Assembly: GCF_963853765.1 (NCBI RefSeq) | Contig: NC_088854.1 | Location: forward strand, 8,680,001-8,744,000 | From: Magallana gigas | Taxonomy: Eukaryota | Direction: 5' to 3' | Length of the DNA stretch: 64,000 nucleotides | In this document: one piece after another, positions 6,174-64,000 of the stretch | Layout: each line of letters starts with the position of its first letter | How positions within the stretch are numbered: position 1 is the stretch's first letter | Made by a program: the position numbers and the translations under genes | Notes under the pieces: generated by a model | What the model was told of the DNA's origin: nothing | The model's input: only the letters and a program-made list of their open reading frames with translations | Database searches by the model: none

Positions 6174-7988
6174 TCATAGCCTAGTTGTATTATTTTCTGG
6201 ATTATTCTCAACGTTGACTACTTGTATTTCCTTTTCCACAACATGTCTGTTCTTGTACACGTGGACCTCCACACCGGCGTACATCGCCGAACCAACGACC
6301 AGAAGAACGATGACAAGCAACAACTTGACTTTGACGCATACGTATAAACTGATAACGAAGTACACAGTAAAACTAGCAGCCTTCGTGCAGTGGTAGTTGG
6401 CAAAGGCTGCTTCCGTCCTCTCTGGGAACAGTAGCGCTATCAATGCTGTAAATTGCAATGGATTAGAATTATAAAACCAATTTACAATTTTTGTATTTCT
6501 TTATATCTTTTCAGTAAAACATGTCACCTACCATTGAATTGTGTTGCCCAAATTCCTTCGCCCAAACCCCACACGACAGCCATGGAAAACAAGTGAACCT
6601 CTTGGTCTGCTGTCGGAGCCCAGAAATATAAAACAATAAATATGGTCAAATCAATGGCAACAGCAGTGGCGAAAAGCACGTAACGTCCCGTGTATTTGGC
6701 TATCCGTGACGTCACAATGGCACTGGCGGTTGTGGCACATCCATAACTGGCCATCACGAAGCCTACCATATGTATCCCAAATGTGCAACTGGCGTAGGAC
6801 TATGAACAAAGAAATATGTATAACTAACTACAATCAAATTAAATTGTTTAATAGGGCTAAATGGTCGTCGTCACTTTAATTTAAGACTGTATTGATCTCT
6901 TTTAGAAGAAAAGCTCTCTATATAAAAAATATATAGGAAAATACCCATATTCAAGGATAAATTTTTCTATAAACTAGATAATAGTTTATAGCCAAACAAA
7001 TCATATCTTAAATTTTAGATAGATCTGGTGTGAGTTTGTTGACCAACGGGTCTCCTTCAGCCTCTTAGAAGTTCTTAAAAAATAATATTCAAATTCAAAC
7101 CTTTGTAAAATCTGTCCATACAACGGCTTTTTGCATTGCAACAATGGAAAACAGGGGCAGAAGAAAGACAAGCTTAGGATCTGTGCGTAGGACAGAGCAG
7201 CAGGCTGTTACGGAGTCCTTACCATTTGCTTTTTCTGCCCATTGTGTTTTTTGAATTGCAGGCAAAAATATTACAGTACACAAAATTCCAAGAACATCAA
7301 AAGCTAGGAAAATCGACATAAGAAGATACCTTGCCGAATTCGCAGGCTCCGTGATTTTGCTTGTTGAGTTACCATGCACATCAACAGGGCAGTCATTACA
7401 GCCGCACGCTGAAGCGGAAGACATAGTCGTATTGAATGCAGTATCCTTGTTTAAAACAAAGGATGAAATCAAGTTTCCCGTTATCTGTGTAAGTTCGAAG
7501 AAGGTGAAGAAAATTCCATTCAAACGACTGAGAGTGGCGTGGATTTCCGCCTTGTTCTTTTCACTGATAGAGTATGCATTTGTCGAAATAAAGACTCCCT
7601 GTGACGTCCACAGTAGCCCGGATATTAGTCCCAGTAGAATGGATGTCGGTATCAAGGTTGCAAATGTTGGATAGAAATTGCTACACGTGTACAGAATATG
7701 TGATACCCAGGAAATAAGCAAAGAAATCTTAATTCCAAGCGTCTTTATCATCCAGGGAGCTAAGATGGCGGATACGATGACAAATGCATAGAGACACGAC
7801 AGCGATGTTATTCCTAGCCCGTCGTCTTGGTTCAAACTACTCTGGAGATTCTGTAGAGCAGTGTAGGCAGTAAACACAGCGAAAAAACTCAGGGAAATGA
7901 TCACGACGTTCCAGGTTTCCCGTCCGGTAATTCCAACCTCATTCTCAGTTGTTTTACACCCAAAACAGATCTTCATTGTATGTTTCAT
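6174..7988 (-). CDS. UNC93A: UNC-93-like protein A (MFS-type membrane protein), copy A, 3 exons
   Basis: Exons approx 7097-7988, 6530-6810, 6174-6434 are in phase. UNC-93 family motifs NVVIISLSFFAVFTAYTALQNLQSSLN, YPTFATLIPTSILLG, FFTFFELTQITGNLISS and EAAFANY are present. Confidence 0.9.
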
Positions 7989-16526: not shown

Positions 16527-19326
16527 TCACTTGTTTACAGTAGTTTTGTTCCTGTATACGTGAACCTCCACAACGGCGTACATCGCCGAACCAACGACCA
16601 GGAGAACAATAACAAGCAACAACTTGACTTTGACGCATACGTATAAACTGATGACGAAGTACACAGTAAAACTAGCAGCCTTCGTGCAGTGGTAGTTGGC
16701 AAAGGCTGCTTCCGTCCTCTCTGGGAACAGTAACGCTATCAATGCTGTAAATATTCCAATAAAATTACACCTCAGTTTATTTTATTCTTTTTTGTCATTA
16801 ATTTCAAACACGTTTACATAAAAATATATATAACCCCGAGTACCCAAACTCCGTCACCATAAGCAGAAAACCTCCCGCGTTTCTATGTAAATTATTTTTT
16901 GTGGTTTTTATCATTTGCAATCACTAAATATAATCTGAAACAATATAATTTATAAAATTATTACCAAAATATTTTTTATTTTTATTCAAATAAGCCCTCT
17001 GAATACGACGCTTATCACACGTGCTATCATAACTTATGAACCTAACTCCGTCACCCACATGCTCTATGATATGGCAGGGAATGAAGACACATTAACAATT
17101 TAGTTAAAACTCCATTTGTATCTAGGCCAAGTTATAGTAAGTAAAAATGGTGCATACAATTTAAATTGTATTTAATTTCATCGAAATGAAATGATCGCCC
17201 GATTAAAGAATGGGTCCATGTAACAACAATCACAATGGCCTTTTCAGAATGTATGGATGCCGTTTGATTTATGTCCTTACATATTTAAAATATTTTATAT
17301 CATTAATTAATTAATTACTTATTATATTATTTATTTATTACATTTTTAGAAATGTAGCATATTCTAAATAGCGATAAACCGGATATATCTATACCCTGTA
17401 TAAGGCAAAAGTATCGGCATGAGCGATTTGACGTTATCATCAAGAGTAGTGCATAAAGGCTATTGCGGACTGAAAAAAATGTATTAATTACCTTAATCAA
17501 AAATGTATTACATGTTAAATGTTTCATCTTGACCTCTCTAAAAATGGCTGACCACCGTAAATGATCGAATGGGCCCGCATGTCAGAAATATCGATATTTT
17601 AGTGCACCCGTGAAAAAGTGTTAGCCGATTTCCCACAATTAATGGTGCATAAAATGAACAAGGTTTAATTCTGTTATTTTTTGACACATTCTTAACTTTA
17701 ACCGTTGCAAATTGTTGACATTTGATTAAAGATTTTTGACATGTAAAAAATGACGTCATAATCGCACTTGATTTCAAACGGCGAGGAGTTTCCCGAAAGT
17801 GACGGAGTTTGGGTAGTGACGGAGTTAGGGGGCTATGCGATATAAAGTGTATATAAAACGGCATTTTCCTTTGAGAAAAAGAGAAAATGAAAATTTCACC
17901 TACCATTTGATTGAGTCTGCCAGATACCTTCTCCTAGGCCCCACATAACAGCCATAGCGAATACATATGCTTTTTGGTTTTCCGTAGGAACCCATACGTA
18001 TAAAAGGATAAAAATTGCCAAATTGACAGCTGCCGCGAAGGAAAAGAGAATATAACGCCCCGTGTATTTAGCTATCCGTGACGTCACTAAGGCACTGATG
18101 GTGGTGGCACATCCATAACTGGCCATAACAAAACCTACCATCTGTATTCCAAAGATGCAACTTATGTATGACTGAAAAGAGAATTAAGAGACTCTAGATT
18201 ATTTACGTTCATCAACATTTTTACTATTGCAGTATCAGTATGTCAGTCATATAAAAATATTGGAAAGTTTAAAAGGTTAAATCTATGGATTATTTTCTTT
18301 ACAGTATCATTGTTTAGAGCTTAACAATTCATATCTTAAAATTTTAGGAAGATTTTGATGGTTAATTTGTTGAACATCCAGTCTCCTTAAAGCAATGTAA
18401 CGAAATACATGTAGGCCTACAGTTAATTTAATGTTTTGTAACATTGAAGCACAAACCTTTGTGAAATCAGTCCACAATACGGCTTGTTCCATTGCCATAA
18501 TTGAAATAAAGGGTAAAAGAAAAGCAAGTTTTGGATCCCGCAAAGCGGAGAAACAGGCTGTAAATGATTCTTTTTTGTTCGATTGTTCTGCCCATTCACT
18601 TTTAGGAATTGAGGGCAAAAAGGCGGCAGTGCAAAGAAATCCAAGCACATCAAAGGCCAAGAAGATCGACAACATTAGGTAGACTGTTGGCGCCGCAGGC
18701 TCCACGATTTTGCTCGTCTCGTTACCGGAAGTGGTTATGGGACAGTCATTGCAACCGCATGTTGACGTAATAACTGACGTCATATTATATTCATCCTTGT
18801 TTAAAACAAAGGATGAAACTAAATTTCCTGTTATCTGTGTTAGTTCATAAAAGGTGAAGAAAATTCCATTTAAACGACTGAGAGTGGCATGCGTATCGGC
18901 TCTATTTAGCTCGGAAGCCGAATATGCATTGTTAGATATAAACACACTCTGAGAAGTCCATAATGGACCAGATATCAATCCAAGTAGAATAGATGTCGGT
19001 ATCAAGGTTGCAAAGGTTGGATAGAAGTTGCTGCACGTGTACAGAATATGTGATACCCAGGAAATAAGCAGAGAAATCTTAATTCCAAGCGTCTTTATGA
19101 TCCAGGGAGCTAAGATGGCGGATACAATGATGAATGCATAGAGACATGACAGCGATATTACTCCTAGTCCGTCCTCTTGGTTCAAACTACTCTGGAGGTT
19201 TTGTAAAGCAAGATAGGCAGTAAACACAGCGAAAAAGCTCAGGGAAATGATCACAACATTCCAGGTTTCTCGTCCACTTATTCCAACTTCTTTCTCGGTA
19301 GTTTTACACCCAAAACAGATCTTCAT
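16527..19326 (-). CDS. UNC93A: UNC-93-like protein A, copy B, 3 exons
   Basis: Exons approx 18459-19326, 17902-18172, 16527-16746. Same intron positions and motifs as copy A, with a shorter C-terminal tail (YRNKTTVNK*). Confidence 0.9.
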
Positions 19327-35132: not shown

Positions 35133-38100
35133 TTAAATTCTTTTGTATGTGATTAGATATTCGGGATAGCAGGCCTTGTTGTCATACAGAATAAATTCTC
35201 TAAAGTTCCAGCTTCCATCTACAACTATGGAATCAAACATGGCACTATGGGTAGGGTCCTTGCACCGATCATTGTGACAGCTCTTACAAGGAGGCCTGGT
35301 ATAGGGATGTTTGTTTGTGGTATCAGTTCTGATGAACATTTCGCCAAGGCAAGCTCGAACCAAAAGCATTTTCTTCTCATGGAGATCTCTTTGATCTTTT
35401 GGATCTGCAAAAACATAACATTCAAAACGCAATTGGTAATCCGTTCTATTACCCTCAGCGTTAGCAACACACTTGGCAACGGGTAACACAACGAATTATT
35501 ACATGCGCGTAAATCATGCACGTACGGTTTGCCGTAGAATTCACTTCATTTCTTTATAAAACAGTAAAATGTTCTTTAAAATTAAGACATTCAGTATAAT
35601 AAAATGAATAGTGCCTGTTATGGAAGGGTAACTGTTGAAATTGACATCCCTCGAAAACCATTGTCAATGGTTGTCTCGGGGTGTTTTCAACAGTTACCCT
35701 TCCAAACAGGCACTATTTATATATTAACCCCAAAGAAGTGGCTCAATTCAACTGATTAGAGCATTTTTATCCAATAAAATAATAGCAATACTTTATTACG
35801 ACAAAATTCACAAAGTTTACCTGCATACTGATCCGATTTACTCGAGCTCTCTGCACAGTATACTCCATTTCCAAAAACTGGATTGTTTGCTATCCTCCCA
35901 TCTAATCCCTGAGTTAAAATATTTGTAATGAGACTTGGTTGAGTCCCATGGAACAAATAATGCTCATTGATCCCTGGGTAAATCTCCACCTGAAGACATG
36001 GATCGGCTATCTGTGTAGTTGCCACATCTCCACTTTTCGCGTGCGGAATCTGCCCTAGTGCCTTGAATTGCCCCTTCTGTGAAGCTCGTAGGAAGATCTT
36101 TTCTCTGTACTTCCAATACTCCTCAAAAAGATGAGGACTTTCAAGACGTTCTATATTAGTGATCTGTATCTTTGTATAGTTTAACTGGGCTAAACCAACT
36201 GCATCAGTGCCTTTACCCACAAACTGGGACTTCCAAGTATTTAATGCCAACTTCTCTACAGCAGAATATGTTTGAGAGCTTGACTTTAAAGCTTCAAGTT
36301 TAAAGTCCTTTGATGAGACACGGGAATTCCAAGTTGCCAAGTCATTGGAGGAAGTGTAAAATGTCCAATAGGATGGAGTTACAGCCTTCATTTTGTACAG
36401 ATTCTCAAAATATGGCTTTGAATTCACTGGTGACTTGTTAGCATGTGCTGTAATAAATTAATTACTGTTTAATTTTATTTTATTCATTAGCATACCTCAT
36501 TGAAATAATCTTATACAAAGTGAAATTTGTAGGATGTTTAACATTGAAATACCTGTCCTTATGTTTGTGATACAATTTTAAAACTTAGAACACTTAACTT
36601 AAGAACATGATATATTGATGATAACTGGGCATATTGCTTATTAAATTAATTGTGTGTATGTTAAACAAATCAAGCACCTGTTGGTGGGTTAGGACTCTGC
36701 AGAGTTGCTGCTGGGGTCGACATCTTGAAAGCTGAGAGAAAGGCCTGTAATCGACCACAATCAAGCTACATGTGTTATATGGAAGAAGCTATATCATTAT
36801 ATGAAAATGTTGAAAATAATCTTTTTCCATAACTTTGTGTAGCCTATAAGACTTGAATAATCATGCATGCATATGGTAATTCCATCTCTAACACTGTGCA
36901 CCACTGACCTGCTCCACTGTTTTCCTATTCCTGTCTTGGTTGTATACAACAATAGTGATGCGAGCAAGTTCTGTTTGCGGATATTTCTGATCAAAGTCCT
37001 CGATGCACTCAGCCATTACTTGTGCCACTTGGTCGGGAGGGTAGTTCAGAGACCCTGTCCCCAGGGTGGGGAAAGCCAGGGTCTTTGTCATCTTGTGCTT
37101 GTTGGCCTCCTCTAGACATTTGGTCACAAAGTCTTTTAAGATCTGTTAAAATAGGTTTGATTTACACCAACATTTTTTACAAACACATGTTTAAATTTAT
37201 GCATGTTAAAATATGAAGGAACAGATTTGTAAAAATTGTATCAACAATTATACAATATACAAATACTGCATGAATAAAGTAGCTGATCATGATAACTAGT
37301 AAATACTATTTTTTTGCATGGAAAACTGATATACAAGTATACTAGTGGAATATAATAACAGCCATAGTTGATAAGATGTCATTTAATTGTCTACCAGTTA
37401 TAAACTCTCAAAACTAAATTAATTTGCCCCACAGAGGTGAAGTGCAAGCTAAGATGTGTGACTGTTTGTGTGAAAGGCGGGAGGCATGAATAAGGCAAGC
37501 CTTTTATCATTATTTTTTTACATTCTGATGTTATATACCCGTACATTTGTTTAGTTATTTTTGCTAATAATCTTAATTTAAGTTTCGGAATAAACAGTAT
37601 ACATGCAGGGAAATATTTGCCCCCATTTTTTTTCACCCCTTCTGCCCTTGTTGTCAGCGGGCACCTAATTTAATTAAGACTGAACAACCTCAAATTTCTC
37701 ATACTATCTCTCCTTAATACATGTACAACTGTGTGGATTCAAGAAAGGGCAAAACCATTTGCAAATGTAGAAAGGCAAAAAAAACCAAAAACCAGGGCAA
37801 GCATAACCCTGTATACAGAATAATCATTTATTATATTTTAATACATCAGAACAGAAGAACTTAACAACTTTAGTATACAGTTGGACAGTATAAACAAATG
37901 AGTCCTAGCAACTCTCTCACCCTTAAGCAGACTGTACCTGTTTAGGTGTAGGCGTCCCAGCAGTCCCCCACTTTGGAATGGCTCCGTGGTACACAAACTT
38001 ACACTGTAGATTATGACCTCCGGTAATGGCGAGGTCGCCGGACTGAATCCCCTGAGGATACTTCTGGTCACACTCTGTCTGTAGACCAGGCCCCGCGGCC

Positions 38101-43719: not shown

Positions 43720-44113
43720 TTAGATGTTTAATATTGATTTTTATCCCCAGTCACTTTTTTATAAACAAAGTGAAAGTAATAAGTAGATTAATCTGAAGTA
43801 TATCTATTTTTGTCATTCCAGAGACATAAATAAATAATGTTATTTATGTCTCTGGTCATTCTAAATATAAAACCTGGTAATCTTAAAGTTGTTTATACTT
43901 CCTATTTTCCTATTTTCATTTTCTTAATCTACGTTCCACTACCTGGGAGACATTATTGTTGATTTTGGTAACACCGTTCGTTATATTTGTACTGAATTAG
44001 TTTAACACTGGTCTTGTTTAATCCCTCCAGCTATAATCTTTCGGTGACCCAGCTTTGATCGGGTTCGAAATTCGTAAAAAAAAAAAAAAAAAAAAAAAAG
44101 GCTAAAGGGGAAA
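43720..44113. promoter_or_regulatory. Probable bidirectional promoter between the PARP and the Scm3/HJURP-like gene
   Basis: Divergent ATGs are only about 395 bp apart, with a long poly(dA) tract at about 44076-44099. No TSS data. Confidence 0.5.
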
Positions 44114-47100
44114 ATGGCGGGGGCTTTGAAATATATGTCAGATCATGAGAATCGATTGCAAAGATTTAAGTCGAATCTTTTGTATATCTTCGATAAGGTT
44201 GGAACTGCATGAATAAAATTGACATTCCTTATCAAGTTTCTTTGTCTGGACGTAAGCAGTATTCGAATATGATTTGAACATGTCTAATTTCTGGTTTATG
44301 ATTATAGTACGAAAACTGTGAAGACGATGATACAGAAATAGACCTGCGTGATCTTTCTTTGCATCGAGGACGAAGTAAGACTTAACGTTTACTTTTTTAC
44401 AGTTCTTGTACATCTTCTAATATGCTTTATAGGGGGTCTAGTTGTTAATGTTACTGTCTAATGTTCATGATGTTTTATCATATTCCAATGCATTTCTTAC
44501 CATGACTGCCTTTAGCCCCCTTTCACCAGCTGTTCACAGTCAGGTTGGGACTAATCTCCCAAGTGGGTTATATAGAATGTATGTTCGTTGGCTGCATGCA
44601 AGGCCAACATAAAATGGATAATTTATTGATTATGAGTAAATTGCTTATTGGGCTTAATTATATTATATTATGGCAAACAACATGATACACGTACTGTGAG
44701 ATACATGTATGGAGTGAACAAGTTATAGGGTGAACGAACGATAATATGGGTGAACAGACACCGGGTGATCCGACCCAGGCAAACAGGTAGATAGGGCAAA
44801 TGAACCCAGTACCGGTTATATAAGCACGTTTGAGTTATAATAAATTTAAAATGAAAAGAAATAAATTTTTAATTTGGTAATTCCTAAAATAAATCAGCAT
44901 AAATACATATCATGCAATTGCAACCACTTTTCATATAAGGCAATAAAACAGTTCAGATTTCCAGTAAGGCAAATCTGTAACCTGGTTACAAATGAAACCA
45001 GACTAATGCAATAATCACCCTTCCTGATTTAATGCCTCAAATTCTGTGTAAAAGTGGTTTTCTCTAAAACAGGGTAACAAGGGTTACGAGGTTAAAGGGA
45101 CCTAAACACAGTTTTATATCAAAATTTTAATTTTTTTTATTATAAAATAGATGTAAAATATATGTACATGTTAAATAATTGACCAAACTTTATTGTTAGA
45201 AATCAAATTACATGCAAGATACAGAGGTAAGAAATCATGGACTCATTGTTATACAGTCAAACTTTGATATCTCGCACTAGATGGGACTATTTCAACACTT
45301 CGAGATATCCGAGTATTCGAGATGTCATGGGTAAAATACTTAAAAAATAAGTGGTTGGGACTTACAAATCACTTAGACATATCTATTGTATTCGAGATAT
45401 CGAAGTTCAACTGTATATGAAAACAAAGCTGGAGTCTGATATTCATTTACAAATAATGTGAAGTAAGGAAATTACCATATTTTTGACAAAATGACTTGTG
45501 GCATAAAAGATAAACTTATTCAATGTGTTCATAAATAAAATTATGAGCAAAAGAAAGCTCCATTTAATTGAAACTTATACCAGGGCCACTCTTAAAAAAA
45601 ATGTTTGTTTGGAATTGTCGCTTGGAGGTTTCTAGACTTGAGAGGGAGGGAATTTTTTTTTTCAAACTTGAAGTTTCACTAATTAAAAGTTGGTTTAAAA
45701 AAATGTTCTTCAGTTTTTGCTGATAAAATTTTATCAGTGGGGGGTATTTCAATGAGACGGGAGGCAATTCCAAACAAACAATAATTTTTTTTTGCCCAAT
45801 ACAACACATGTAAACAATAACAAAGACTTCAGCTTTGTTTACAAAACAAAGAGTTTCGAACTCTGGATCTTGCTTGTAACTCGATATTTGACCTACATTT
45901 TTGGGGAAGCATTAACGATACCCATATAAATCATTCTATACATTAAAAAAAAATGGAAAAATAAAATTTGAAAATGTAAAGCTCAAATCATGTCAAAGAT
46001 CCTTTAATAGACACTTGGAACAATGCTAATTTCTCTTTTGAAGCATATAACCATGGTTACAGACACTTAGATTAATACTAATCTCTCTTAAGAAACAAGG
46101 TAACAGTGTTAAGACTTGTGAGGGTAACAGACCCTTGTATCTATATGTATGTCTTTTAATTCTGAAACAGAGTAACAAGGGTTACGAGAGTTACAGACCC
46201 TTGTATCTATACTAATGTCTCTTTTGAAACAGGGTAACAAGGGTTACTAGGGTAACAGACTCTTGTATTTATGTGTATGTCTTTTCTGAAACAAAATTAT
46301 GAGGGTAACAGACCCTTGTATCAGTATGTATCAATATGAACTAGTACAGACTTTAGCTTGTGTGTTAACCCTTTAGCTCAATTGTTAGAGCATTAATAAT
46401 TGTTTTATTTTACCGAGGGGTCTGGAATTGTAGCCTACTGGTGGATATTCCTCCTATTCTGTTAATTGACTAATAAATCCACTCCATATGTGCAGAACTT
46501 TCCTGAACATGCTTAAGTTTATTTATACTTATTAATTAAAGAATAAAAACATTTATGATAACTTGTTTGACTTGTACATGATGACCAAATTTGAAAAAAG
46601 TCTTCTAGCTATATATACATGTTTTTCATAATACATGTATAGTAAATTCATAATTTTGTAGAACAATTTATTAGAAGCAAAACCAAGGGGTTTGGACACA
46701 GCAAACTTAGGAGTACACCAAGAGAGGGGAACCTAAATCTAGAGGACCATGGTACGTAATTCTGTTGTCATGACCTCTATATACCTGGTATATAGTACAT
46801 GTTTAAGTCCATGTACATCAAAAGTAATTTAAAATCAAAGAGGAAAATTTGTTTTAGTAAGGCATGACTAATGAGAGATAATGGTGACCAACGGTTCAAT
46901 ATGTCCATGGAAAATTGTAAATTAGCAGTTTGCCATCAGCGACATTATTTAGTCTTATATTTAGTATATGTATTAGATAATGATGTCATGTAAAGAAAGC
47001 AGTAATGTTTAAGCAATGTCCTGAGTTCAGTCACTGTCTGGATAACTCATATTAATGAGATACTAAGTTGAGATAATTGTCTTTTTATTACAAATTAAAT

Positions 47101-50100
47101 AATATTTGATTTCACAATCTAAAAACAAGTATATCCAACTTTTCTACTAAAAAACAATTTCTCTTTCATATTGAGCTGAAAACGGCAGAAGACTGTCTGA
47201 CTCGCATCAATTGCATATGATTGCATGCACAGTTGTAAAATGTTTTGTGAACAGTCATGAAGTCCATGATATTTTTTATTTGTATAAGTGTTCAAGGAAA
47301 GAATAACATCCCACTTTCATACAAATCATGTAACTTTGAAATATTAAAGATGATTCTTTTTAATCAATGAAACTGCCTTACCTGAACTTGGAATAAAATA
47401 ACCAAAACATGGTGGTACTTTATTGGATGAGTTCATTTCTGAAGGAAGTTTTTACAGGGCATGTGACATTTTTGTCTGTCTATAATCTCTAAATATAGCG
47501 ACTTGCATTTTTAGCTATATGTACTTAGATTACAACTTTTGTAATGGGGTGGTAAACAAGATGGGTCCAATAACAGAGGGATATCAGTTACGTACAGGAA
47601 TATGATCTAGCTATTAAATGAATACATTATATAATATATATAAGTTTATTTCATGTGATCAAGTTTTACATGATAATGTTTGAAAAATAGGTAAAAGATA
47701 TGTATGTGATATTGTAAGTACATTTAATTTTGTGTATAATATCTATATTAATATTTTGTATTATTTATCCCATGAGATAAGATTATATACAGCAAAGACT
47801 GCAAATTATACCATTATTTATCCTTTTCTGCATAATGACTGGATTAAACCTGTTTGTCAGTCCAAACTTCTTTCAGGATATTTTTTTGTTGTGCTTGTTA
47901 ACATTAGTCATTTTCATGCCAAAATGATATCTTTAGATGGGTATATATAATTTTTTATTCCCCCCCCCCCCCCTCTAAGAAGGGAAAGCATATTGCTTTG
48001 CTGCTGTCTGTCCACCAACAGTTTCAACTCATTTTCTTTGCAGAGGATGAACATATTGAAATGAAATTTGGTATACAGGTTTATCATGATAATATCTAGG
48101 TCAACTTCGATATTGGGTACGATCAAGCAATTTTCGACAGAGTTATGGCCCTTGGACTTAGAAAAATTCCAGTTTTTTGCAGTTTCCGCTCATTTTCTTT
48201 GCAGAGGATGAACATGTACATTGAAATGAAATTTGGTATACAGGTTTATCATGATAATATCTAGGTCAAGTGTGATATTGGGTACGATCAAGCAATTTTC
48301 GACAGAGTTATGGCCCTTGGACTTAGAAAAATTCCAGTTTTTTGCAGTTTCCGCTCATTTTCTTAGCAAAGGATGTACATATTGAAATAAAATTTGGTAT
48401 ACAGATTTATCATGATAATATCTAGGTCAACTTCGATATTGGGTACGATCAAGCAATTTTCGACAGAGTTATGGCCCTTGGACTTAGAAAAATTCCAGTT
48501 TTTTGCAGTTTCCGCTCATTTTCTTTGCAGAGGATGAACATATACATTGAAATGAAATTTGGTATACAGGTTTATAATGATAATATCTAGGACGAGTTCG
48601 ATATTGGGTACAATCGAGCAATTTTCAACAGAGTTATGGCTCTTGGACCTAGAAAAATTCCAGTGATTTGCAGTTTCTGCTCATTTTCTTCGCAGAGGTG
48701 CACATATTGATATGAAATTTGGTATACAGGTTTATCATGATAATATCTAGGTCAAATTTGATTTTGGGTATGATAGAGCAATTTTCGACAGAGTTATGCC
48801 CCTTGGACATAGAAAAATTCTCAATATTGGCATTTTACATTCATTTATTTGTGGATGTTTCCAAGGGAGGGGGGGGGGGCACATAAGTGTTTCACAAACA
48901 TCTCTTGTTAGTATTGCTTTCTAAAGCAAAGCACTTTTCCTTAACATGTACCATGCCATTTTTACAATATCATGCTTAAATTTCAGGACAGAATAATATC
49001 CCTGTCATTGATTACAGACAACAGACAGGGGATAGACAGGTAAAATATCTTAATTGATGATTTCTTCAAAATAGGAACATGTTATTTGAGATTTTCATTA
49101 TATGTTAACCTTGAATAAGCTATAACTTTATCATGATAACCCAAAATTAAACTACATTTAGTAACAACTGGAAAAGTTGAGAGTATTCGATACAAACAGT
49201 GTGTAATGCTTAAAGACAATGACCTTAGGTGTTCTTCACTGTAAATATTTTATTTTTGCTTTGATTTCAAAATTGATTTGCAATATTTAAAGCAAAGCAA
49301 TCTTTTTTCTTCAAGTTCAAAAAGTGAATAATTAAGTATTTCTTCTGAATTCATGAGTGTCAACTTTACACTGTACCCTTATTTCAACAGAGAGATGACC
49401 TACAGGCTACATATGTTGTGTCAAGGTCAGATGATCTGTGGAATTCTCATAGAAACCAACCTCTCCCACTGAATTATGATGAGCCAGATTGCTTGGATCC
49501 CCGACAGAGAATAGATGTGGATCCTAGTGATGTTGATCCCAGGGAAGTCGACCATTTCTCAGACGACAGCTCCAGGATACAGTGCCTCAATGGTAAATCT
49601 AAATCACACAGCAGAGCAATTCCTGCCAGGAATTGATCTGGGCCACAACATTTTGATTTTTACACATATTTAATTAAAATGGCGCAGTTTAGCAAACTGT
49701 CTGGGTACTAAGATAAAAAGAACATACAAAGAACTAACATAGATATTATTCGTTGTAAAGTGACTGAAACGGATATGCAACTAAACTGCTAATTTGTAAA
49801 AGTACATTTATTAGTCATGTGCACTTAAATCAGGTTATTACCGGTAAATGCTTATTGTGATGTTCGTAAAAATATTACATTATCCAGTGTGTGTGTGATA
49901 ATACTACAAATCGATTTTGTAATGTGTAGTCCAATACATTTCATCAATGACTATATTGATATTTAATTGTACAGTTGCTGAAAGTTATAAAAATTTAAGT
50001 TATAAGGAATCATTCTTTGATTATTATGAGGTGATCAAATATGGTTGGGCAAGATCAAATCTATCATAAAGCCTTTGGGCTTCATCTTCGATCATATTTG

Positions 50101-53065
50101 ATCACCTCATAATACACAAAGAATGACTTTTTATTCCTTAAGACAATGATTGTGAAGACATGACCTCCAAGTAAATTCTCGCAATCAACTTTCTGATCTT
50201 TCTTTGATCATTTGATAAGAAAGATGTACATGTAGTTGATGATTATGAAACAACCCATTCCAATGAAAATTAAATGAATCACTTCAAGTAATTAAAGTCT
50301 AGTATCAAACACTTACCGGTAAGGAACTGTTCTTAAGTTTCAATCATCCTAAATAGATGTAGCTTCGTGGTCATACACCCTGCAAAAAATTACAATGTGA
50401 AAAGAATGCTGCAACTTGTGGTACCCGGTATATCGATACAACTTGTCAAATTCTGAAAGTACTAAATATTTTAATTCAACTTTCCTAAATTTTAGAGACA
50501 TACAAGGACGTCTTGTCCTTGTTTGGTCCAGATGAGGAGGAGGAAATCAGTGATGCAGAAACATTGACCACTTCCTCGGACAGTGAGGAAAGTTTGGATG
50601 ACGACTTTGAGGACCTGACTTACAACCTGAGCTCATCAGAGGAGTCAGACAAAGACCAGGTAAAAAAAAAAAAAAAAGCTCCTCAGACGTGTTAGACAAA
50701 GAAAAGGTACACAACTAAGCTCCTTGGAGTCAGAACACAAATTTGCTTTCCTCAGAGTTGACAGGGAAAGTACAGTAACTGAGATCCTAAGAAAAGTCAA
50801 TAAAGGGATGTAAAAAGTAATGACAAGTTAAAGCCCTCTTTTATTCTGTATTGAATCAAACTTTATAAAAATGATTCACAAGGTTTAAGACATTAAATGA
50901 CAGTAGAATTTGTTTCTTATATTTCACAGAATATTTATGTTACTTAAGTCTATCTCTTTCATATTTTCTAGTATATTTATTTGCAAATTAAAAAAAAAAA
51001 TGATTCAAGACTAATAGATTTTAATTTTTCTTAGACTTGCAGGCCAAGGGAGATGAGAAGGGGTTACCATGGGGATTTACAAAGCAGTCCAAGAATGGAG
51101 TCTTATTTCGCATCCTCAGAGGACAGCTCTGGTTATCATAGCTCAGAAATCCAGTCCAGTCTAATCAAAAGAAGCCAAATCCACAAACAGTACCGCCAAC
51201 CTGAAACCAACATCAGCTACCGGCAGATTCAAAACCACTTCCTGTCTGGTGACGCAGGCTTAGTGAGCATGAAACGCCCCAATTACCGTCAACAAATTCA
51301 GAACCTGTACAAGTCAAGTAGCAGAGAAAATTCAGGGAAGTCTGATAGAGACCTTGAAAAGAAACAGAGGGGAAGAAATTCTCTGTGCTTAGATGAATTT
51401 GAAGCTTCATTTAAAATGTCTCAGAGTATGATGACAAATGGAGCTTCAGAATATTGCAGTCAACCAGAACTTAAAGTAGGAACTCCGGGACTGAGCAATC
51501 AGCCTATGTCTTCCATTGAAAAGGTTACAAAGTGGATTTTGCCACCTCAGGAAGGGGGTGGAATAGACAGATACACTGTGAAGGCCAAGCGGAAACTTTC
51601 CATTCAGAAAGTGCCAGAATCAAGTGCAGAGAGTTTCAATAGAGAGAGTGAGCTATCTTCAATTGTGTCTAGTTCTTGTGGAAATTCTACCATCACCACA
51701 GAGAACTTATTACACCAAAATCAGATGAGGAATACTGAGTTTGATCAAGAAAGCATGTCAATAGGATGTAACAGTGTCAATTGTTTTTGTCAAAACAGAG
51801 GTGTTTGTAACTGTACAGATTGTGTTAACAAGTGTGACTCAAGGCAGCCTCAGCAGTTTGGAGATGATGATTGTGATAGTGGAGAAAGTATTTCTCAGTA
51901 TAATGAGTTTGGAAGTAGAAGTAGGACTTCAATGACATTTGCTTGTCCTTCAGGGGGTAATAATTCAGCATACAGTTTTCCACCTCAAGCTATTCCACTT
52001 TCACCAAGAACATCCACTGAAATATCAACATACCGACCTCAGCCAAGAACATTTACTGAAATATCCACATACCAACCCCAACCAAGAACATCCACTGAAA
52101 TATCCACATACCAACCTCAGCCAAGAATATTTACTGAAATATCCACATACCAACCCCAACCTAGAACATCCTCTAAAATATCCGCGTCCCAACCCCAACC
52201 AAAAACCTCTTTCTTTTCTCCCCAGAGAGCTCACAGTTGCCCGTCATCTCCACAGTCTGTTGGACTGTTTCCTGATCCGAGCAGCTCTCCGTCTTCATCA
52301 CTGGCAAGACTTCGCCTCTCCTCACCCAGATCTTCACCCAAAGCGTCACAAAACTATTACAGAAGACAGGCTGTGGAGGAGCACTCACCCCGCATACAGG
52401 CAACATGCAATGTTCCACCGGTATTCAAAGTTCCAAATGCTTTTCCATATGAAAGATCTCCATCAACCAAAAGAGTTTCACAAAGAACACTGATAGATGA
52501 AGGGGAAGGAGGACAGCAGCAGGTTGAAAGGGCTCGAGATAAGCATGTGAGGTCGAACTCTTGTGACAACAGGTCAAATCGTAGATTTAGATCTCAATTT
52601 AATGACAAGCCTGATTGGATGAATTTTGATGGACAGTATCGAGTTTTCCATAGAAAAAATCTGGATAGCAGTCTTTCAAGAAGAGTTTGTGGTGAATATC
52701 AACAAGAAGAAATGGAGAGTGGACAACAACTGAAAACTGGCTATCCTCTCCAGTCACTGCCCAGAGAACTTGTGTCTGTCGGAAAGACCAAGCCTAAGTG
52801 TTTAGGAAGCTTATTTTCACCCCAGAGGCCCAGTTTCACTCTCAAAAATAGAGACACGCGTAATGAAATGATCTCAGATAGGGGGGATCACTGGAACCAA
52901 ACTAGGCAAGAGCATTCAAAGATTTCATCCGAGATTCCATGTCGCAAGAACTTACAAAGCACACCAAAGAAAAGGAACTGTGAACTTGTACTAGACACTT
53001 CTCTTTCAACTATTAATCCAAATGTAGATAGTTCAAGTGATGAAGATGAAGTCATTTTAATTTAA
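44114..53065 (+). CDS. About 896-aa mostly disordered protein with an N-terminal Scm3/HJURP-like (CENP-A chaperone) motif, 7 exons
   Basis: Exons 44114-44197, 44308-44374, 46662-46751, 48987-49039, 49391-49592, 50496-50659 and 51035-53065 all have GT-AG ends with matching phases (0,1,1,0,1,0). The N-terminus reads MAGALKYMSDHENRLQRFKSNLLYIFDKYENCEDDDTEIDLRDLSLHRGRKQFIRSKTKGFG. Gene model confidence is high; family assignment is moderate. Confidence 0.7.
45092..46007. mobile_element. Kolobok-like non-autonomous DNA element with TTAA target duplication, containing a nested MITE
   Basis: Ends ttaaaggga... and ...tcctttaa. The two flanks rejoin as gagg-ttaa-tagacacttg, matching the local repeat unit gagg-gtaa-cagacccttg. 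Confidence 0.6.
45251..45416. mobile_element. pogo/Tigger-type MITE nested in the element above
   Basis: Left end ta-cagtcaaactttgatatctcg versus right end cgagatatcgaagttcaactg-ta. Confidence 0.7.
46085..46325. repeat. Degenerate tandem repeat of about 60 bp (aaacagggtaacaagggttacgagggtaacagacccttgtat)
   Basis: About 4 copies, plus an interrupted copy at 45066-45091. Confidence 0.75.
47950..48909 (-). mobile_element. HINE-like element in reverse orientation carrying a third satellite of about 165 bp (x5)
   Basis: Right end is ...catctcttgtt (aacaagag on the minus strand), left end tttta plus a hairpin-like GC stretch and gtct microsatellite remnant; the monomer gaaatgaaatttggtatacaggtttatcatgataatatctagg recurs about every 165 bp. 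Confidence 0.75.
50003..50140. repeat. Long imperfect hairpin element
   Basis: aggaatcattctttg..tattatgaggtgatcaaatatg / catatttgatcacctcataata..caaagaatga..ttcct are inverted arms with a central aagcc-tttg-ggctt stem-loop. Confidence 0.75.
52004..52210 (+). repeat. Coding 39-bp tandem repeat x5 (PRTSTEISTYQPQ)
   Basis: Visible in both DNA and translation of the large final exon. Confidence 0.9.
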
Positions 53066-61429: not shown

Positions 61430-64000
61430 ATGAGTGTTTCAGAGAAAAATGTATTTACTGATAATCAGGAGTATCTAAAAGAAAAAGAGGTTCGTGTTTA
61501 GTTTGTTTTAATACAAAATATTTGCTGATGTTGATGATTTATCGATTTTTTTCTGGGCATCTTTTTTTCTTGTATAGTCTGAAAATATTCCCTCATTACG
61601 ATAATTTATTCGATATTGTTGTTTTAAAGGAGTATTTTCTTAGAATTTACAGTTTTATAGATGTTTTCTTCGCCTCGCTGACAATATCGTTACAAGTAGT
61701 ACCTATAGAATTTAGCATAGAAGACATCTGCAGTGTCTTGCGTAAAGTGGTTTTTAACATTAAATTTGATATGCTATGCAACCTCTTGGTTAATTGCCAA
61801 CAATTGTTCGGTGCAAGTGGATCAATAAATATTTTCTTGTATCCATGAAGTATTTTACAGACACCATTTGTTATGCCTAATTTTGATATGAATCAACCAT
61901 GCAGTTAAGGCGATTTAGGAGGGGGGTGGGGGTGGGCATAAAAGAATTTATGAAATGTAATTTTAAAAAGACATTTATGACATCATGACATGTAACCCCT
62001 TTACAGCTAGCATTGGAGGAAACGGAATCTTCTTCAGCTGGTAGCAGTCAGAGTAGTTTAGAGAGTGGGGATGAAAATGTGGGTCGAGGAAATTGGTCCG
62101 GCCGTTTGGACTTCCTATTGTCTTGCGTTGGGTTTGCCGTGGGGCTTGGCAATATATGGAGGTTTCCCTATCTGTGTTATCAAAGTGGAGGAGGTAAGAA
62201 AACAATTATATCTCAGTGCTTAAAAATATGTTTAATTATTTGGAATATAAGGGGTGTAAAGTTTATTTATCTTATGTGCTCTTTTCTTAATCATACATTT
62301 CTGATCTATTTTCAGGTGCCTTTTTGATCCCCTATGTGATATTCCTGTTTCTGTGTGGGGTTCCATTGTTCTTCTTGGAGATCAGTTATGGACAGTTTGC
62401 CAGTCTGAGCCCAATTACTGTTTGGAAAATTTCACCGCTCTTCAAGGGTTAGTAATCTCTTTTGCATCAAGCCTCTGGGCTGCGTAGCCATACTAGTACC
62501 TCACTGAGAGATTAAATTAAAGGTGAGATTCATGGAAAAGTTTCTCTCCATTTTTACTGAGTTCATGCATGTTTGCCAAGGTTAAAGGGTAAAGCCTCTG
62601 AATATTAGTGCTTATAGTACAGTACCAATCTTACAGTAGCTAGTATATAATTCTTTGTTGATCTCCTTGATATGAAAGACAGAGATCAATACTCCCAAAC
62701 AGTAATTGGCACTATTCCATGGTTAGCCCAGCTACTTTACAATAATTTAAAGGCCAAAAGTTATGAATTTCCAAAAACATTCTGAATGAATATTTAACAA
62801 AAGGTAGAGTTAATGCTGTAATATAAAACAACAAATGTTACAGGGGACCCTTTCTCCCTTTAGGTAGTAGATGTCAGCTGTCAGGGCTGACTGGTAGGAT
62901 AGATAGCCAGCCAGTCTCCCACCAGGGGAATTAATTATCTCACTCCTGAACCTGCATAATAACTGTCAGATAATTGCCTTTGGACAAGGAGAAACACTCC
63001 CTAGGAAATTATTTACTGACCCCCTAGGTTAGCGAAAAGTGTTGTGTCATAAGTGTCAGGTCAGTTTATGGAGGGAGGGAGATGATGAATAAAAACTGCT
63101 CATTGGTTGGAATGGACTTCTGTTGACCTTCTATAATGCTATTATTAGTTAATGGGAGTCTAATTTTAGAGCTTTGCGTCAAGAGAGTTGTAAAAGACTA
63201 TCAGAAGCTGCCTGTTTTGTGTTGTAAAGATTGGGTTTTTTCCCAGAATTAAAGGGGGGATGAAAATACCAAAAAATTAGCATGCAGAGTCACAATCAGA
63301 TAAAACTGAGGAAGTTGGGAATACTCACATGCATAATTGAAGAGATTTAAACAAATAGATTTTGAAGGGGAAATTAACACACTCACCCTCCCACAGATTT
63401 GATGTTTAGGTGGATCAAAGAAGGAAATTATTTAACAGACTACAAAGATATTTATATTGAAACATTGCATACAAATTGCAAAATAGGAAGCCTTATAAAT
63501 AACCATTTTACAAAACCTTTTAAATCTAGTTTCCCAAAAAAATAAAACGTCCCTGTGGAGTGAATGATGTGTAACAATTAAGTGGAAAAGATTGATGTTG
63601 ATATAAATTTTTAAGAATTTGAAATGTTTGAATCTTTCAATATGTCTAGAAATAAGTCTGTTCAAGTTAGAAGTTCATTTGTATGATTAGAAATACGATC
63701 TCTCTACTATAAATTGTTCATGTACCGTACATCAAGAAGTAGGGAAAAACATGAATTTTTTTTGCTTTATTTCAGGTGTTGGCTATGGCATGATCATAAT
63801 CTCTGGTATTGTGTGTGTGTACTACAACATCATCATAACATGGACCATCTACTTCCTATATCACTCCTTCAAAGCAGTGTTACCATGGAGCACTTGTGGC
63901 AATTCCTGGAACACGGAAAAGTGCTACATCCGCGGGGAAATTAATCTGACCCAAGTGGACAATGCCACAGCCAATGGGACGATTGGATACAACGTAAATA
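61430..64000 (+). CDS. SLC6 sodium/chloride-dependent transporter (amino-acid type; glycine/proline/taurine-like), 5' part, runs off the right edge
   Basis: Exons 61430-61489, 62007-62193, about 62316-62448 and about 63778 onward are in phase. Hallmark motifs [65 protein letters not shown] and [12 protein letters not shown]. Confidence 0.95.

What the first reader, a model, noticed from the sequence alone, without database searches (positions are those of the whole stretch)
44114..44374. Candidate mollusc Scm3/HJURP (CENP-A deposition chaperone) hidden in two tiny first exons
Seen: exons 1 and 2 (84 and 67 nt, separated by a 110-bp intron and invisible to the ORF track) splice to ENRLQRFKSNLLYIFDKY-ENCEDDDTEIDLRDLSL. 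This N-terminus joins in phase through five more exons to a long Ser/Pro-rich, SP/TP-rich disordered body. Established: the CENP-A-binding Scm3 domain is a long amphipathic helix ending in KY, then an acidic loop and a D/E-(I/V)-D-L strand, placed at the N-terminus of an otherwise disordered protein in HJURP. Comparators recalled from memory and needing verification: yeast Scm3 IISKYESIEEQGDLVDL, human HJURP RFQRRMQRLIEKYNQPFEDTPVVQM. Inference: this is the oyster centromeric histone chaperone, a family notoriously hard to detect outside fungi and tetrapods and likely annotated here as uncharacterised.
Basis: partly seen in the sequence, partly recalled or inferred. Interest (0 to 1): 0.92.

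Follow-up and report, generated by a model that had tools for sequence, protein, structure and literature searches.

The report
Oyster HJURP/Scm3 centromeric histone chaperone gene
Two tiny first exons really do start a seven-exon oyster gene whose N-terminus is a Scm3/HJURP-type domain, which loads the centromeric histone CenH3; this is a sound annotation, but a 2026 survey already showed such orthologues are widespread in animals, including a mollusc.

Summary
Exon 1 (44114-44197) and exon 2 (44308-44374) are joined across a 110-bp GT..AG intron in RNA contigs of two runs. The same contigs carry on through exons 3-5 and into exon 6. In-phase splicing gives a seven-exon, 896-aa protein.

The spliced N-terminus matches Pfam Scm3 (PF10384) at 28.6 bits as a 50-aa piece and 27.0 bits as an 80-aa piece, against a curated cut-off of 24.3. 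The match covers an amphipathic helix ending in KY followed by an acidic/short-hydrophobic strand.

The Saccostrea and Ostrea orthologues are named "uncharacterized protein". The two Saccostrea ones score just below the cut-off; the Ostrea isoform lacks the exon-1 helix and has no Scm3 hit. The rest of the protein is Ser-rich, predicted unstructured and fast-evolving, with no sequence relative found outside oysters.

A three-chain model was made from the Saccostrea N-terminus, the same species' CenH3 (orthologue of the published Cg-CenH3) and oyster H4. It scored 0.74 against a best control of 0.01, in the canonical Scm3 binding mode.

Not tested: preference for CenH3 over H3, and centromere localisation.

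Hollis et al. 2026 (PMC13322267) already reported Scm3/HJURP across Metazoa, including the snail Biomphalaria. This is therefore a new member of a known kind. Interest is moderate to low.

The parts
44114..44197 (+). Exon 1, coding part (84 nt, aa 1-28). Holds the start codon and the amphipathic helix of the Scm3 domain up to the K of the KY motif.
   Evidence: Sequence. GT donor at 44198. RNA contigs join 44197>44308 in X1 and X2. In-frame stop upstream.
44198..44307 (+). Intron 1, 110 bp, GT..AG.
44308..44374 (+). Exon 2 (67 nt, aa 29-50 plus 1 nt). Holds the Y of KY, the acidic run and the E-I-D-L strand.
44135..44349 (+). Span encoding the Pfam Scm3 match (aa 8-42, profile positions 2-37 of 53), interrupted by intron 1.
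   Evidence: Pfam PF10384: 28.6 bits as a 50-aa piece and 27.0 bits as an 80-aa piece; cut-off 24.3.
46662..46751 (+). Exon 3 (90 nt). Holds the conserved KTKGFGHSKLRSTPREG motif.
   Evidence: Joins 44374>46662 and 46751>48987 in X1 and X2. AG/GT sites. The motif is invariant in the oyster orthologues.
48987..49039 (+). Exon 4 (53 nt).
   Evidence: Joins in X1 and X2. AG/GT sites.
49391..49592 (+). Exon 5 (202 nt).
   Evidence: Join 49039>49391. The contig leaves the genome at 49592, followed by GT.
50496..50659 (+). Exon 6 (164 nt), an acidic Ser/Asp/Glu-rich stretch.
   Evidence: The loose end after 49592 matches 50496 onward with one mismatch. The donor at 50660 is inferred from phase.
51035..53065 (+). 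Exon 7 (2031 nt including the stop). Ser-rich, predicted-unstructured body ending in an acidic C-terminus.
   Evidence: Open frame in phase 0 from the AG at 51033-34. Colinear with P0003 and P0005. No Pfam family found. The join to exon 6 was not seen directly.
52003..52206 (+). 39-bp coding tandem repeat (5.2 copies, a 13-aa unit) inside exon 7.
   Evidence: Poorly conserved in the orthologues.

Best explanation
The gene at 44114-53065 (+) encodes the oyster (Magallana/Crassostrea gigas-type genome) orthologue of the Scm3/HJURP chaperone.

Proposed mechanism, inferred from the family. The N-terminal about 55 residues fold onto a soluble CenH3-H4 dimer. An amphipathic helix lies antiparallel on CenH3 helix alpha2 and on H4 alpha3, and ends in the KY dipeptide that meets a Glu of alpha2. 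The following acidic/short-hydrophobic stretch (T-E-I-D-L) pairs as a strand with loop L1 of CenH3. This would shield the dimer from DNA and from tetramerisation until it is delivered to centromeres.

The remaining roughly 840 residues are a fast-evolving, Ser-rich, unstructured tail with a few conserved islands and S/T-P sites. It would carry centromere targeting and cell-cycle control.

Shown here: the exon structure and its transcription, the profile match, conservation among oysters, and the predicted binding mode for the Saccostrea orthologue. Inferred: chaperone activity, specificity for CenH3, and the roles of the tail.
For: 1. RNA contigs join the two small exons to the downstream exons. 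The seven-exon frame is open for 896 aa.
2. Pfam Scm3 PF10384 scores 28.6 and 27.0 bits against a cut-off of 24.3. Scaled to the whole genome this is E about 1e-3.
3. The match is at the extreme N-terminus of a long polar protein, the architecture described for HJURPs (PMC13322267). In AF2, the S. cucullata orthologue has a mean pLDDT of 33, and the helix at residues 18-37 is the most confident element.
4. KY and the acidic/hydrophobic strand are present.
5. Residues 1-60 are about 70% identical between Magallana and Saccostrea, among the top conserved islands. The whole protein finds only oyster relatives among 1.84 billion representatives, in line with the rapid HJURP evolution reported in PMC13322267.
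6. Complex prediction used S. cucullata CenH3 45-152, H4 20-103 and candidate residues 10-85. Scores were 0.74, 0.76 and 0.73, with a best control of 0.01. That mark was reached by 51 of 78 solved complexes and 2 of 108 mismatched pairs. Partner pLDDT was 61-63 and the runs shared at least 77% of contacts. The helix runs antiparallel to alpha2, K35 touches E103, and residues 46-49 lie against L1 residues 91-96.
7. The genome has one divergent H3. It contains the exact antigen peptide of the published Cg-CenH3, so the client histone exists.
Against: The Saccostrea orthologues fall just below the Pfam cut-off: 19.7-20.4 bits as whole proteins and 23.8-24.0 bits as 110-aa pieces. The full-length window protein was not scored.

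Neither a single sequence nor an oyster-only profile retrieves any HJURP, Scm3 or CAL1 chain from the PDB.

The complex was modelled with the Saccostrea protein, not the window's own. The tool warns that a pass for a family with solved complexes may reflect memory of those complexes.

Preference for CenH3 over H3 was not tested. 16 of 28 predicted interface positions differ from H3, against 36 of 81 over the histone fold, which is no clear enrichment.

The vertebrate HJURP mid and C-terminal domains are absent. There are no experimental data.
Confidence: 0.8

Rival explanations
1. Chance resemblance. A disordered nuclear protein of unrelated function happens to start with an amphipathic helix followed by an acidic stretch that scores marginally against a short (53-position) profile.
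For: The profile is short and the score is only 3-4 bits above the cut-off. The orthologues are below it. A second, unrelated-looking ORF in the genome also gives 17 bits. There are no PDB sequence hits.
Against: The genome-wide expectation at 27-28.6 bits is about 1e-3. The match has the right position, the KY motif and the strand motif. It is conserved among oysters. The complex model gives the canonical geometry at 0.74, with a best control of 0.01.
Confidence: 0.1
2. A Scm3-fold histone binder that is not CenH3-specific. The domain would bind H3-H4-type dimers in general, or the protein would have a role other than centromeric deposition.
For: Specificity was not tested. The predicted interface is not clearly enriched in CenH3-specific residues. 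The tool notes that close relatives of a true partner also pass.
Against: All characterised Scm3-domain proteins are CenH3 chaperones (PMC13322267). The predicted strand contact is with L1 and alpha2, the CATD region. No stronger candidate was seen in the genome scan, although that scan misses intron-split domains.
Confidence: 0.07
3. Gene-model artefact. The two small exons would belong to a separate short or non-coding transcript and not to the Ser-rich protein.
For: The exon 6>7 join was not seen directly. Raw reads of X21 over 44050-44650 lie in the opposite mate orientation to those on exon 5 and cover intron sequence, hinting at another transcript there.
Against: One 1668-nt RNA contig runs from exon 1 through exon 5 and into exon 6. 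The frame stays open across all joins. NCBI models of two Saccostrea species have the same colinear N-terminus on proteins of 1035 and 1080 aa.
Confidence: 0.03

Closest known systems
Human HJURP (Scm3 domain, PDB 3R45 chain C)
   Same: An N-terminal Scm3 domain on a long, mostly unstructured protein. A helix ends in KY and is followed by an acidic/hydrophobic stretch (human ...LIEKYNQPFEDTPVVQM, verified; oyster ...YIFDKYENCEDDDTEIDL). The predicted helix runs antiparallel to CenH3 alpha2, with a Lys-Glu contact (geometry described in PMC13322267).
   Different: No detectable pairwise similarity by phmmer or hmmsearch. No HJURP mid-domain or C-terminal repeat domains. The body is not alignable.
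Fungal Scm3 (Pfam PF10384; PDB 2L5A, 2YFV)
   Same: The window protein matches the Scm3 profile above its curated cut-off over profile positions 2-37.
   Different: The last third of the profile (positions 38-53) is not matched. In oyster the domain is at the extreme N-terminus of an 896-aa protein.
Mollusc candidate HJURP of Biomphalaria glabrata (KAI8798300.1), with the other protostome candidates in Hollis et al. 2026 (PMC13322267)
   Same: The same claim, a remote Scm3-domain orthologue in a mollusc, reached by the same kind of evidence: profile search plus a multimer model with the species' CENPA and H4.
   Different: It is a gastropod, not a bivalve. I could not fetch that sequence to compare it. 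Full-length phmmer with the oyster protein finds nothing outside Ostreidae. No oyster is named in the paper's main text, and its table S1 is not readable here.
Drosophila CAL1 (PDB 6XWS, 6XWV)
   Same: According to PMC13322267 it is a highly diverged Scm3/HJURP orthologue. It shows that the fold persists with little sequence identity.
   Different: Not compared here. The oyster domain is close enough to the canonical family for Pfam to detect.

Membership tests
Scm3/HJURP (Pfam PF10384) | Sequence match to the Scm3 profile at or above the curated cut-off (24.3 bits) | tested here: met
   28.6 bits (50-aa N-terminus) and 27.0 bits (80-aa N-terminus). Saccostrea orthologues score 19.7-24.0 bits, just below. 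The full-length window protein was not scored, because no reference exists for the spliced product.
Scm3/HJURP (Pfam PF10384) | Amphipathic helix ending in a KY dipeptide, followed by an acidic/short-hydrophobic (E/D, I/L/V) strand motif | tested here: met
   ...LLYIFDKY then ENCEDDDTEIDLRDL. AF2 predicts the helix at residues 18-37 in the orthologue. The features are those listed in PMC13322267.
Scm3/HJURP (Pfam PF10384) | Domain near the N-terminus of a long, polar, largely unstructured and fast-evolving protein | tested here: met
   aa 8-42 of 896. Mean pLDDT of the orthologue is 33 with no folded domain, from a shallow alignment. Only Ostreidae relatives were found among 1.84 billion representatives.
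Scm3/HJURP (Pfam PF10384) | Predicted Scm3-like trimer with the species' own CenH3 and H4 | tested here: met
   S. cucullata proteins: score 0.74, best control 0.01 (mark reached by 51 of 78 solved complexes and 2 of 108 mismatched pairs). Partner pLDDT 61-63; runs agree in at least 77% of contacts. The binding mode is canonical. The model was made with the orthologue, not the window protein, and may partly reflect memory of solved complexes.
Scm3/HJURP (Pfam PF10384) | Reciprocal sequence or profile hit to a published Scm3/HJURP/CAL1 protein, or an HHpred hit to 2L5A, 2YFV, 3R45 or 6XWS | tested here: inconclusive
   phmmer and an oyster-only HMM against PDB sequences gave no HJURP/Scm3 chain at E up to 10. 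HHpred is not available here.
Scm3/HJURP (Pfam PF10384) | Co-occurrence with a CenH3 gene, and a single strong candidate per genome | tested here: met
   There is one divergent H3, at G000:C6 (L034). It carries the published Cg-CenH3 antigen peptide. The genome scan with PF10384 gave only two sub-threshold hits elsewhere. That scan cannot see intron-split domains, so 'single' is not proven.
Scm3/HJURP (Pfam PF10384) | Selective binding of CenH3/H4 over H3/H4 | not tested
   Only one complex job was allowed. The residue comparison of the interface is uninformative.
Scm3/HJURP (Pfam PF10384) | Centromere localisation, and a requirement for CenH3 deposition | not testable with these tools
   Needs experiments.
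Vertebrate-type HJURP architecture | HJURP mid-domain and C-terminal repeat domains (Pfam HJURP_mid, HJURP_C) | tested here: not met
   No Pfam family was found in the 670-aa ORF within exon 7 (51053-53062) or in the whole orthologues, apart from Scm3 and, in the two Saccostrea proteins, a sub-threshold AIMP2_LysRS_bd hit. According to PMC13322267 these regions are not shared outside vertebrates, so their absence does not bear on Scm3-family membership.

The most novel reading that the evidence does not exclude
The oyster-specific conserved islands downstream of the Scm3 domain may be previously undescribed centromere-targeting or regulatory modules. They would replace the vertebrate Mis18-binding and DNA-binding regions. 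The islands are:
- the invariant KTKGFGHSKL.STPREG motif;
- the predicted helices around aa 150-190;
- the invariant MESYFASSEDSSGYHSS block;
- ...PMSS.EKVTKW...;
- the SP-rich ...SPSSSLARL.L.SPRSSP... block.

An alternative first exon, as in the Ostrea edulis X2 model that lacks the helix, might produce a non-chaperoning regulatory isoform.
Probability: 0.15. Interest if true: 0.5.

Novelty: new member of a known kind. Interest (0 to 1): 0.35.

Why it matters
It gives a functional name to an oyster gene whose orthologues in related oysters are labelled "uncharacterized". It also pairs that gene with the already published oyster CenH3.

Oysters are reported to have almost no classical heterochromatin (PMC8268682, abstract listed). 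Having chaperone and histone in hand would allow CenH3 loading to be studied in a bivalve.

It adds a bivalve data point to the recent conclusion that Scm3/HJURP is retained across Metazoa. It does not change that picture.

Tried and rejected
- **PDB sequence and profile searches.** Searches with the oyster N-terminus gave only spurious weak hits: ICOS, a tRNA methyltransferase, and a K. lactis protein unrelated to Scm3.
- **ESM Atlas.** The feature search of residues 1-90 gave no usable hit.
- **Word-based homologue search.** Searching with the N-terminus found only three oyster proteins.
- **Full-length phmmer.** It found only Ostreidae plus low-complexity matches, so no broader mollusc alignment could be built.
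- **Six-frame PF10384 scan of the genome.** It missed the window locus itself, because the intron splits the domain. It returned two sub-threshold places. L001 is broken by a stop and looks like noise. L002 is an 87-aa ORF at 17 bits, at a score where about 3 hits per genome are expected by chance.
- **AF2 of the isolated domain.** It gives just one helix, so a fold search would be meaningless and was not run.
- **SANTA (Mis18BP1) scan of the genome.** No match, but the search is exon-wise and its controls were silent, so this is uninformative.
- **Yippee/Mis18 scan.** Three loci pass the cut-off, but they cannot be told apart from Yippee-like genes.
- **CHR-like TTYGAA motifs near the start.** They also occur in the intron, so they were dropped as chance.
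- **Table S1 of Hollis et al.** It is not held as text, so I cannot say whether an oyster entry is listed there.
- **Cluster look-up of the Crassostrea ORF-only proteins.** It showed only unnamed Logan ORFs.

Full report
**Observation.** The sequence is as described. ATG at 44114 opens an 84-nt exon that ends at 44197 before a GT. A 110-bp intron ends in AG at 44307. Exon 2 is 44308-44374 (67 nt) and is followed by GTAAG. An in-frame stop lies just upstream of the ATG. No + strand ORF of 40 aa or more covers the region. The spliced product begins MAGALKYMSDHENRLQRFKSNLLYIFDKY|ENCEDDDTEIDLRDLSLHRGR.

**Transcription and gene model.** Contigs of public RNA runs laid on 44050-50049 show the joins 44197>44308, 44374>46662, 46751>48987 and 49039>49391. 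All are GT..AG, and they appear in two runs of different studies. One of these is a declared RNA library (X2), where depth falls on exon-bearing bins and repeat bins. A single 1668-nt X2 contig carries exons 1 to 5 and leaves the genome at 49592. Its next letters match 50496 onward, directly after an AG.

With a donor at 50660 and the acceptor at 51033-34, the frame stays open. This gives seven exons, 2691 nt and 896 codons. The last join is inferred from phase and from colinearity with the Saccostrea proteins. 'Ser/Pro-rich, SP/TP-rich' is only partly so: Ser 14.6%, Pro 6.5%, 13 S/T-P sites.

**What the N-terminus is.** Against Pfam, the first 50 residues hit Scm3 (PF10384) at 28.6 bits (E 1.1e-6), and the first 80 residues at 27.0 bits. 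Both exceed the curated cut-off of 24.3. The match covers residues 8-42 and profile positions 2-37 of 53. The 670-aa ORF within exon 7 has no Pfam family.

A six-frame scan of the whole 564-Mb assembly with the same profile gives E 0.085 at 22 bits. By scaling, 27-28.6 bits corresponds to roughly 1e-3 to 3e-3 genome-wide. That scan did not see this locus, because the intron splits the domain. Its two other hits are sub-threshold: one is broken by a stop, and the other is a 17-bit ORF at a score expected about three times per genome.

**Relatives.** Searching with exon 7 finds 'uncharacterized protein' entries of Saccostrea echinata, S. cucullata and Ostrea edulis, none with a precomputed Pfam domain. 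The two full-length Saccostrea proteins start with the same MAG.LK, helix, DKYENC, acidic run, TEVDL and KTKGFGHSKL.STPREG. Their Scm3 scores are 19.7-24.0 bits, just under the cut-off, which explains the missing annotation. The O. edulis X2 model has another first exon and lacks the helix.

Residues 1-60 are about 70% identical between the window protein and Saccostrea. That places them among the best-conserved islands, together with about 151-180, 241-270, 361-390 and 631-660. They are therefore not the only conserved part. phmmer of the full S. cucullata protein against 1.84 billion representatives finds only oysters and low-complexity matches. The protein thus evolves fast, as Hollis et al. 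report for HJURPs in general.

No Crassostrea/Magallana protein with this N-terminus was returned by any search, only ORF-only Logan fragments. I cannot tell whether the reference annotation has it.

**Structure.** AF2 of the 1080-aa S. cucullata orthologue, from a shallow alignment, has a mean pLDDT of 33 and no folded domain. The most confident element is a helix at residues 18-37, which is the Scm3 helix. The isolated N-terminus gives the same single helix at pLDDT 75-85, as expected for a domain that folds on its client.

**The client histone.** The genome has canonical H3/H4 clusters, H3.3, and one divergent two-exon H3 at G000:C6 (L034 550-855 plus 2240-2389, 152 aa). It is 99% identical to a Magallana gigas entry but only 75% identical to the Saccostrea orthologue. 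It contains the peptide SKVTGGIKEPRNW, which was used to raise the antibody against the published Cg-CenH3 (PMC7348941).

**Complex model.** The chains were S. cucullata CenH3 45-152, oyster H4 20-103 and S. cucullata candidate residues 10-85 as partner. Scores were 0.74, 0.76 and 0.73, against a best control of 0.01. That mark was reached by 51 of 78 solved complexes and 2 of 108 mismatched pairs. Partner pLDDT was 61-63, and the runs shared at least 77% of contacts.

The contacts follow the canonical Scm3 mode:
- Helix residues 25-36 run antiparallel along CenH3 100-111 (alpha2) and touch H4 84-92.
- K35 of KY touches E103.
- Residues 46-49 (E-V-D-L) lie on CenH3 91-96 (L1).

This corresponds to the KY-Glu contact and the CATD strand pairing described in PMC13322267.

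Caveats apply. The model uses the orthologue rather than the window protein. Solved complexes of this family exist, so the pass shows likeness rather than proof. H3 was not tried as a comparison. 16 of 28 interface positions differ from H3, against 36 of 81 across the histone fold, which says little about specificity.

**Comparison with the literature.** Hollis et al., Sci Adv 2026 (PMC13322267), combined PSI-BLAST/HMM searches, HHpred and AlphaFold-Multimer. They concluded that Scm3/HJURP orthologues exist in most metazoan lineages and name, among others, a Biomphalaria glabrata (mollusc) and a Capitella candidate. No oyster or bivalve is named in the main text, and their table S1 is not readable here. 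No paper in the library links HJURP to Crassostrea in substance.

**Verdict.** The gene is the oyster Scm3/HJURP orthologue. It had escaped annotation because its defining domain is split over two tiny exons and scores at the edge of the Pfam threshold. It is a new member of a known kind and a useful annotation, but after the 2026 survey it is no longer a surprise. Specificity for CenH3, centromere localisation and the function of the conserved islands in the tail remain to be tested.

Noticed in passing
window 48019-48820 (intron 3 of the gene): A tandem array of a 165-bp unit (326-bp higher-order unit, 4.9 copies, 90-92% matches). Copies at 84-94% identity form short arrays on nine of the assembly's contigs (1288 first-look candidates). 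RNA-run contigs pile up on it at depths in the thousands. It looks like a dispersed satellite or TE-borne repeat, of the kind described for oyster satellitomes. It was not compared with named oyster satellites.
   Followed up: partly
L002 1450-1692 (G000:C8:37016173-37016415, +): An 87-aa ORF starting with Met that carries ...LMESLMDKYDHNFDESSIVD... It hits Pfam Scm3 at 17.4 bits, below the cut-off, at a score expected about 3 times per genome. It is probably chance, but it is the only other Scm3-like place seen.
   Followed up: partly
L034 550-855 and 2240-2389 (G000:C6:22160149-22161988, +): The two-exon CenH3 gene of this genome (152 aa). It contains the antigen peptide of the published Cg-CenH3 and is 75% identical to the Saccostrea orthologue, whereas canonical H3 is highly conserved across eukaryotes (PMC7348941).
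   Followed up: yes
window 44050-44650: Raw poly(A) RNA reads of run X21 lie here with the first mate on +. On exon 5 the first mate is on -. These reads also cover intron 2 sequence at about 2x depth. This may be an antisense or unspliced transcript over the gene's 5' end. The strandedness of the library is unknown and depth is very low.
   Followed up: no
window 44077-44099: A run of about 23 A directly upstream of the start codon, apparently inside the 5' UTR. One RNA contig extends 159 nt upstream of 44115.
   Followed up: no
P0006 residues about 55-200 (Ostrea edulis orthologue): The conserved STPREGD motif after the Scm3 domain is expanded in O. edulis into about ten tandem copies of a roughly 15-aa unit (..PREGDIQSSGQGWSR..). 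This isoform model also starts from a different first exon that lacks the Scm3 helix.
   Followed up: no
window 7095-7988 (-), 18307-19326 (-), 35756-36427 (-), 62013-62327 (+): Neighbouring coding pieces: two UNC-93-like (PF05978) ORFs, a PARP catalytic-domain ORF (PF00644), and the first coding exon of a sodium:neurotransmitter symporter (SLC6, PF00209).
   Followed up: partly
window 46120-46293: A 62-bp tandem repeat (2.7 copies) in intron 2.
   Followed up: no
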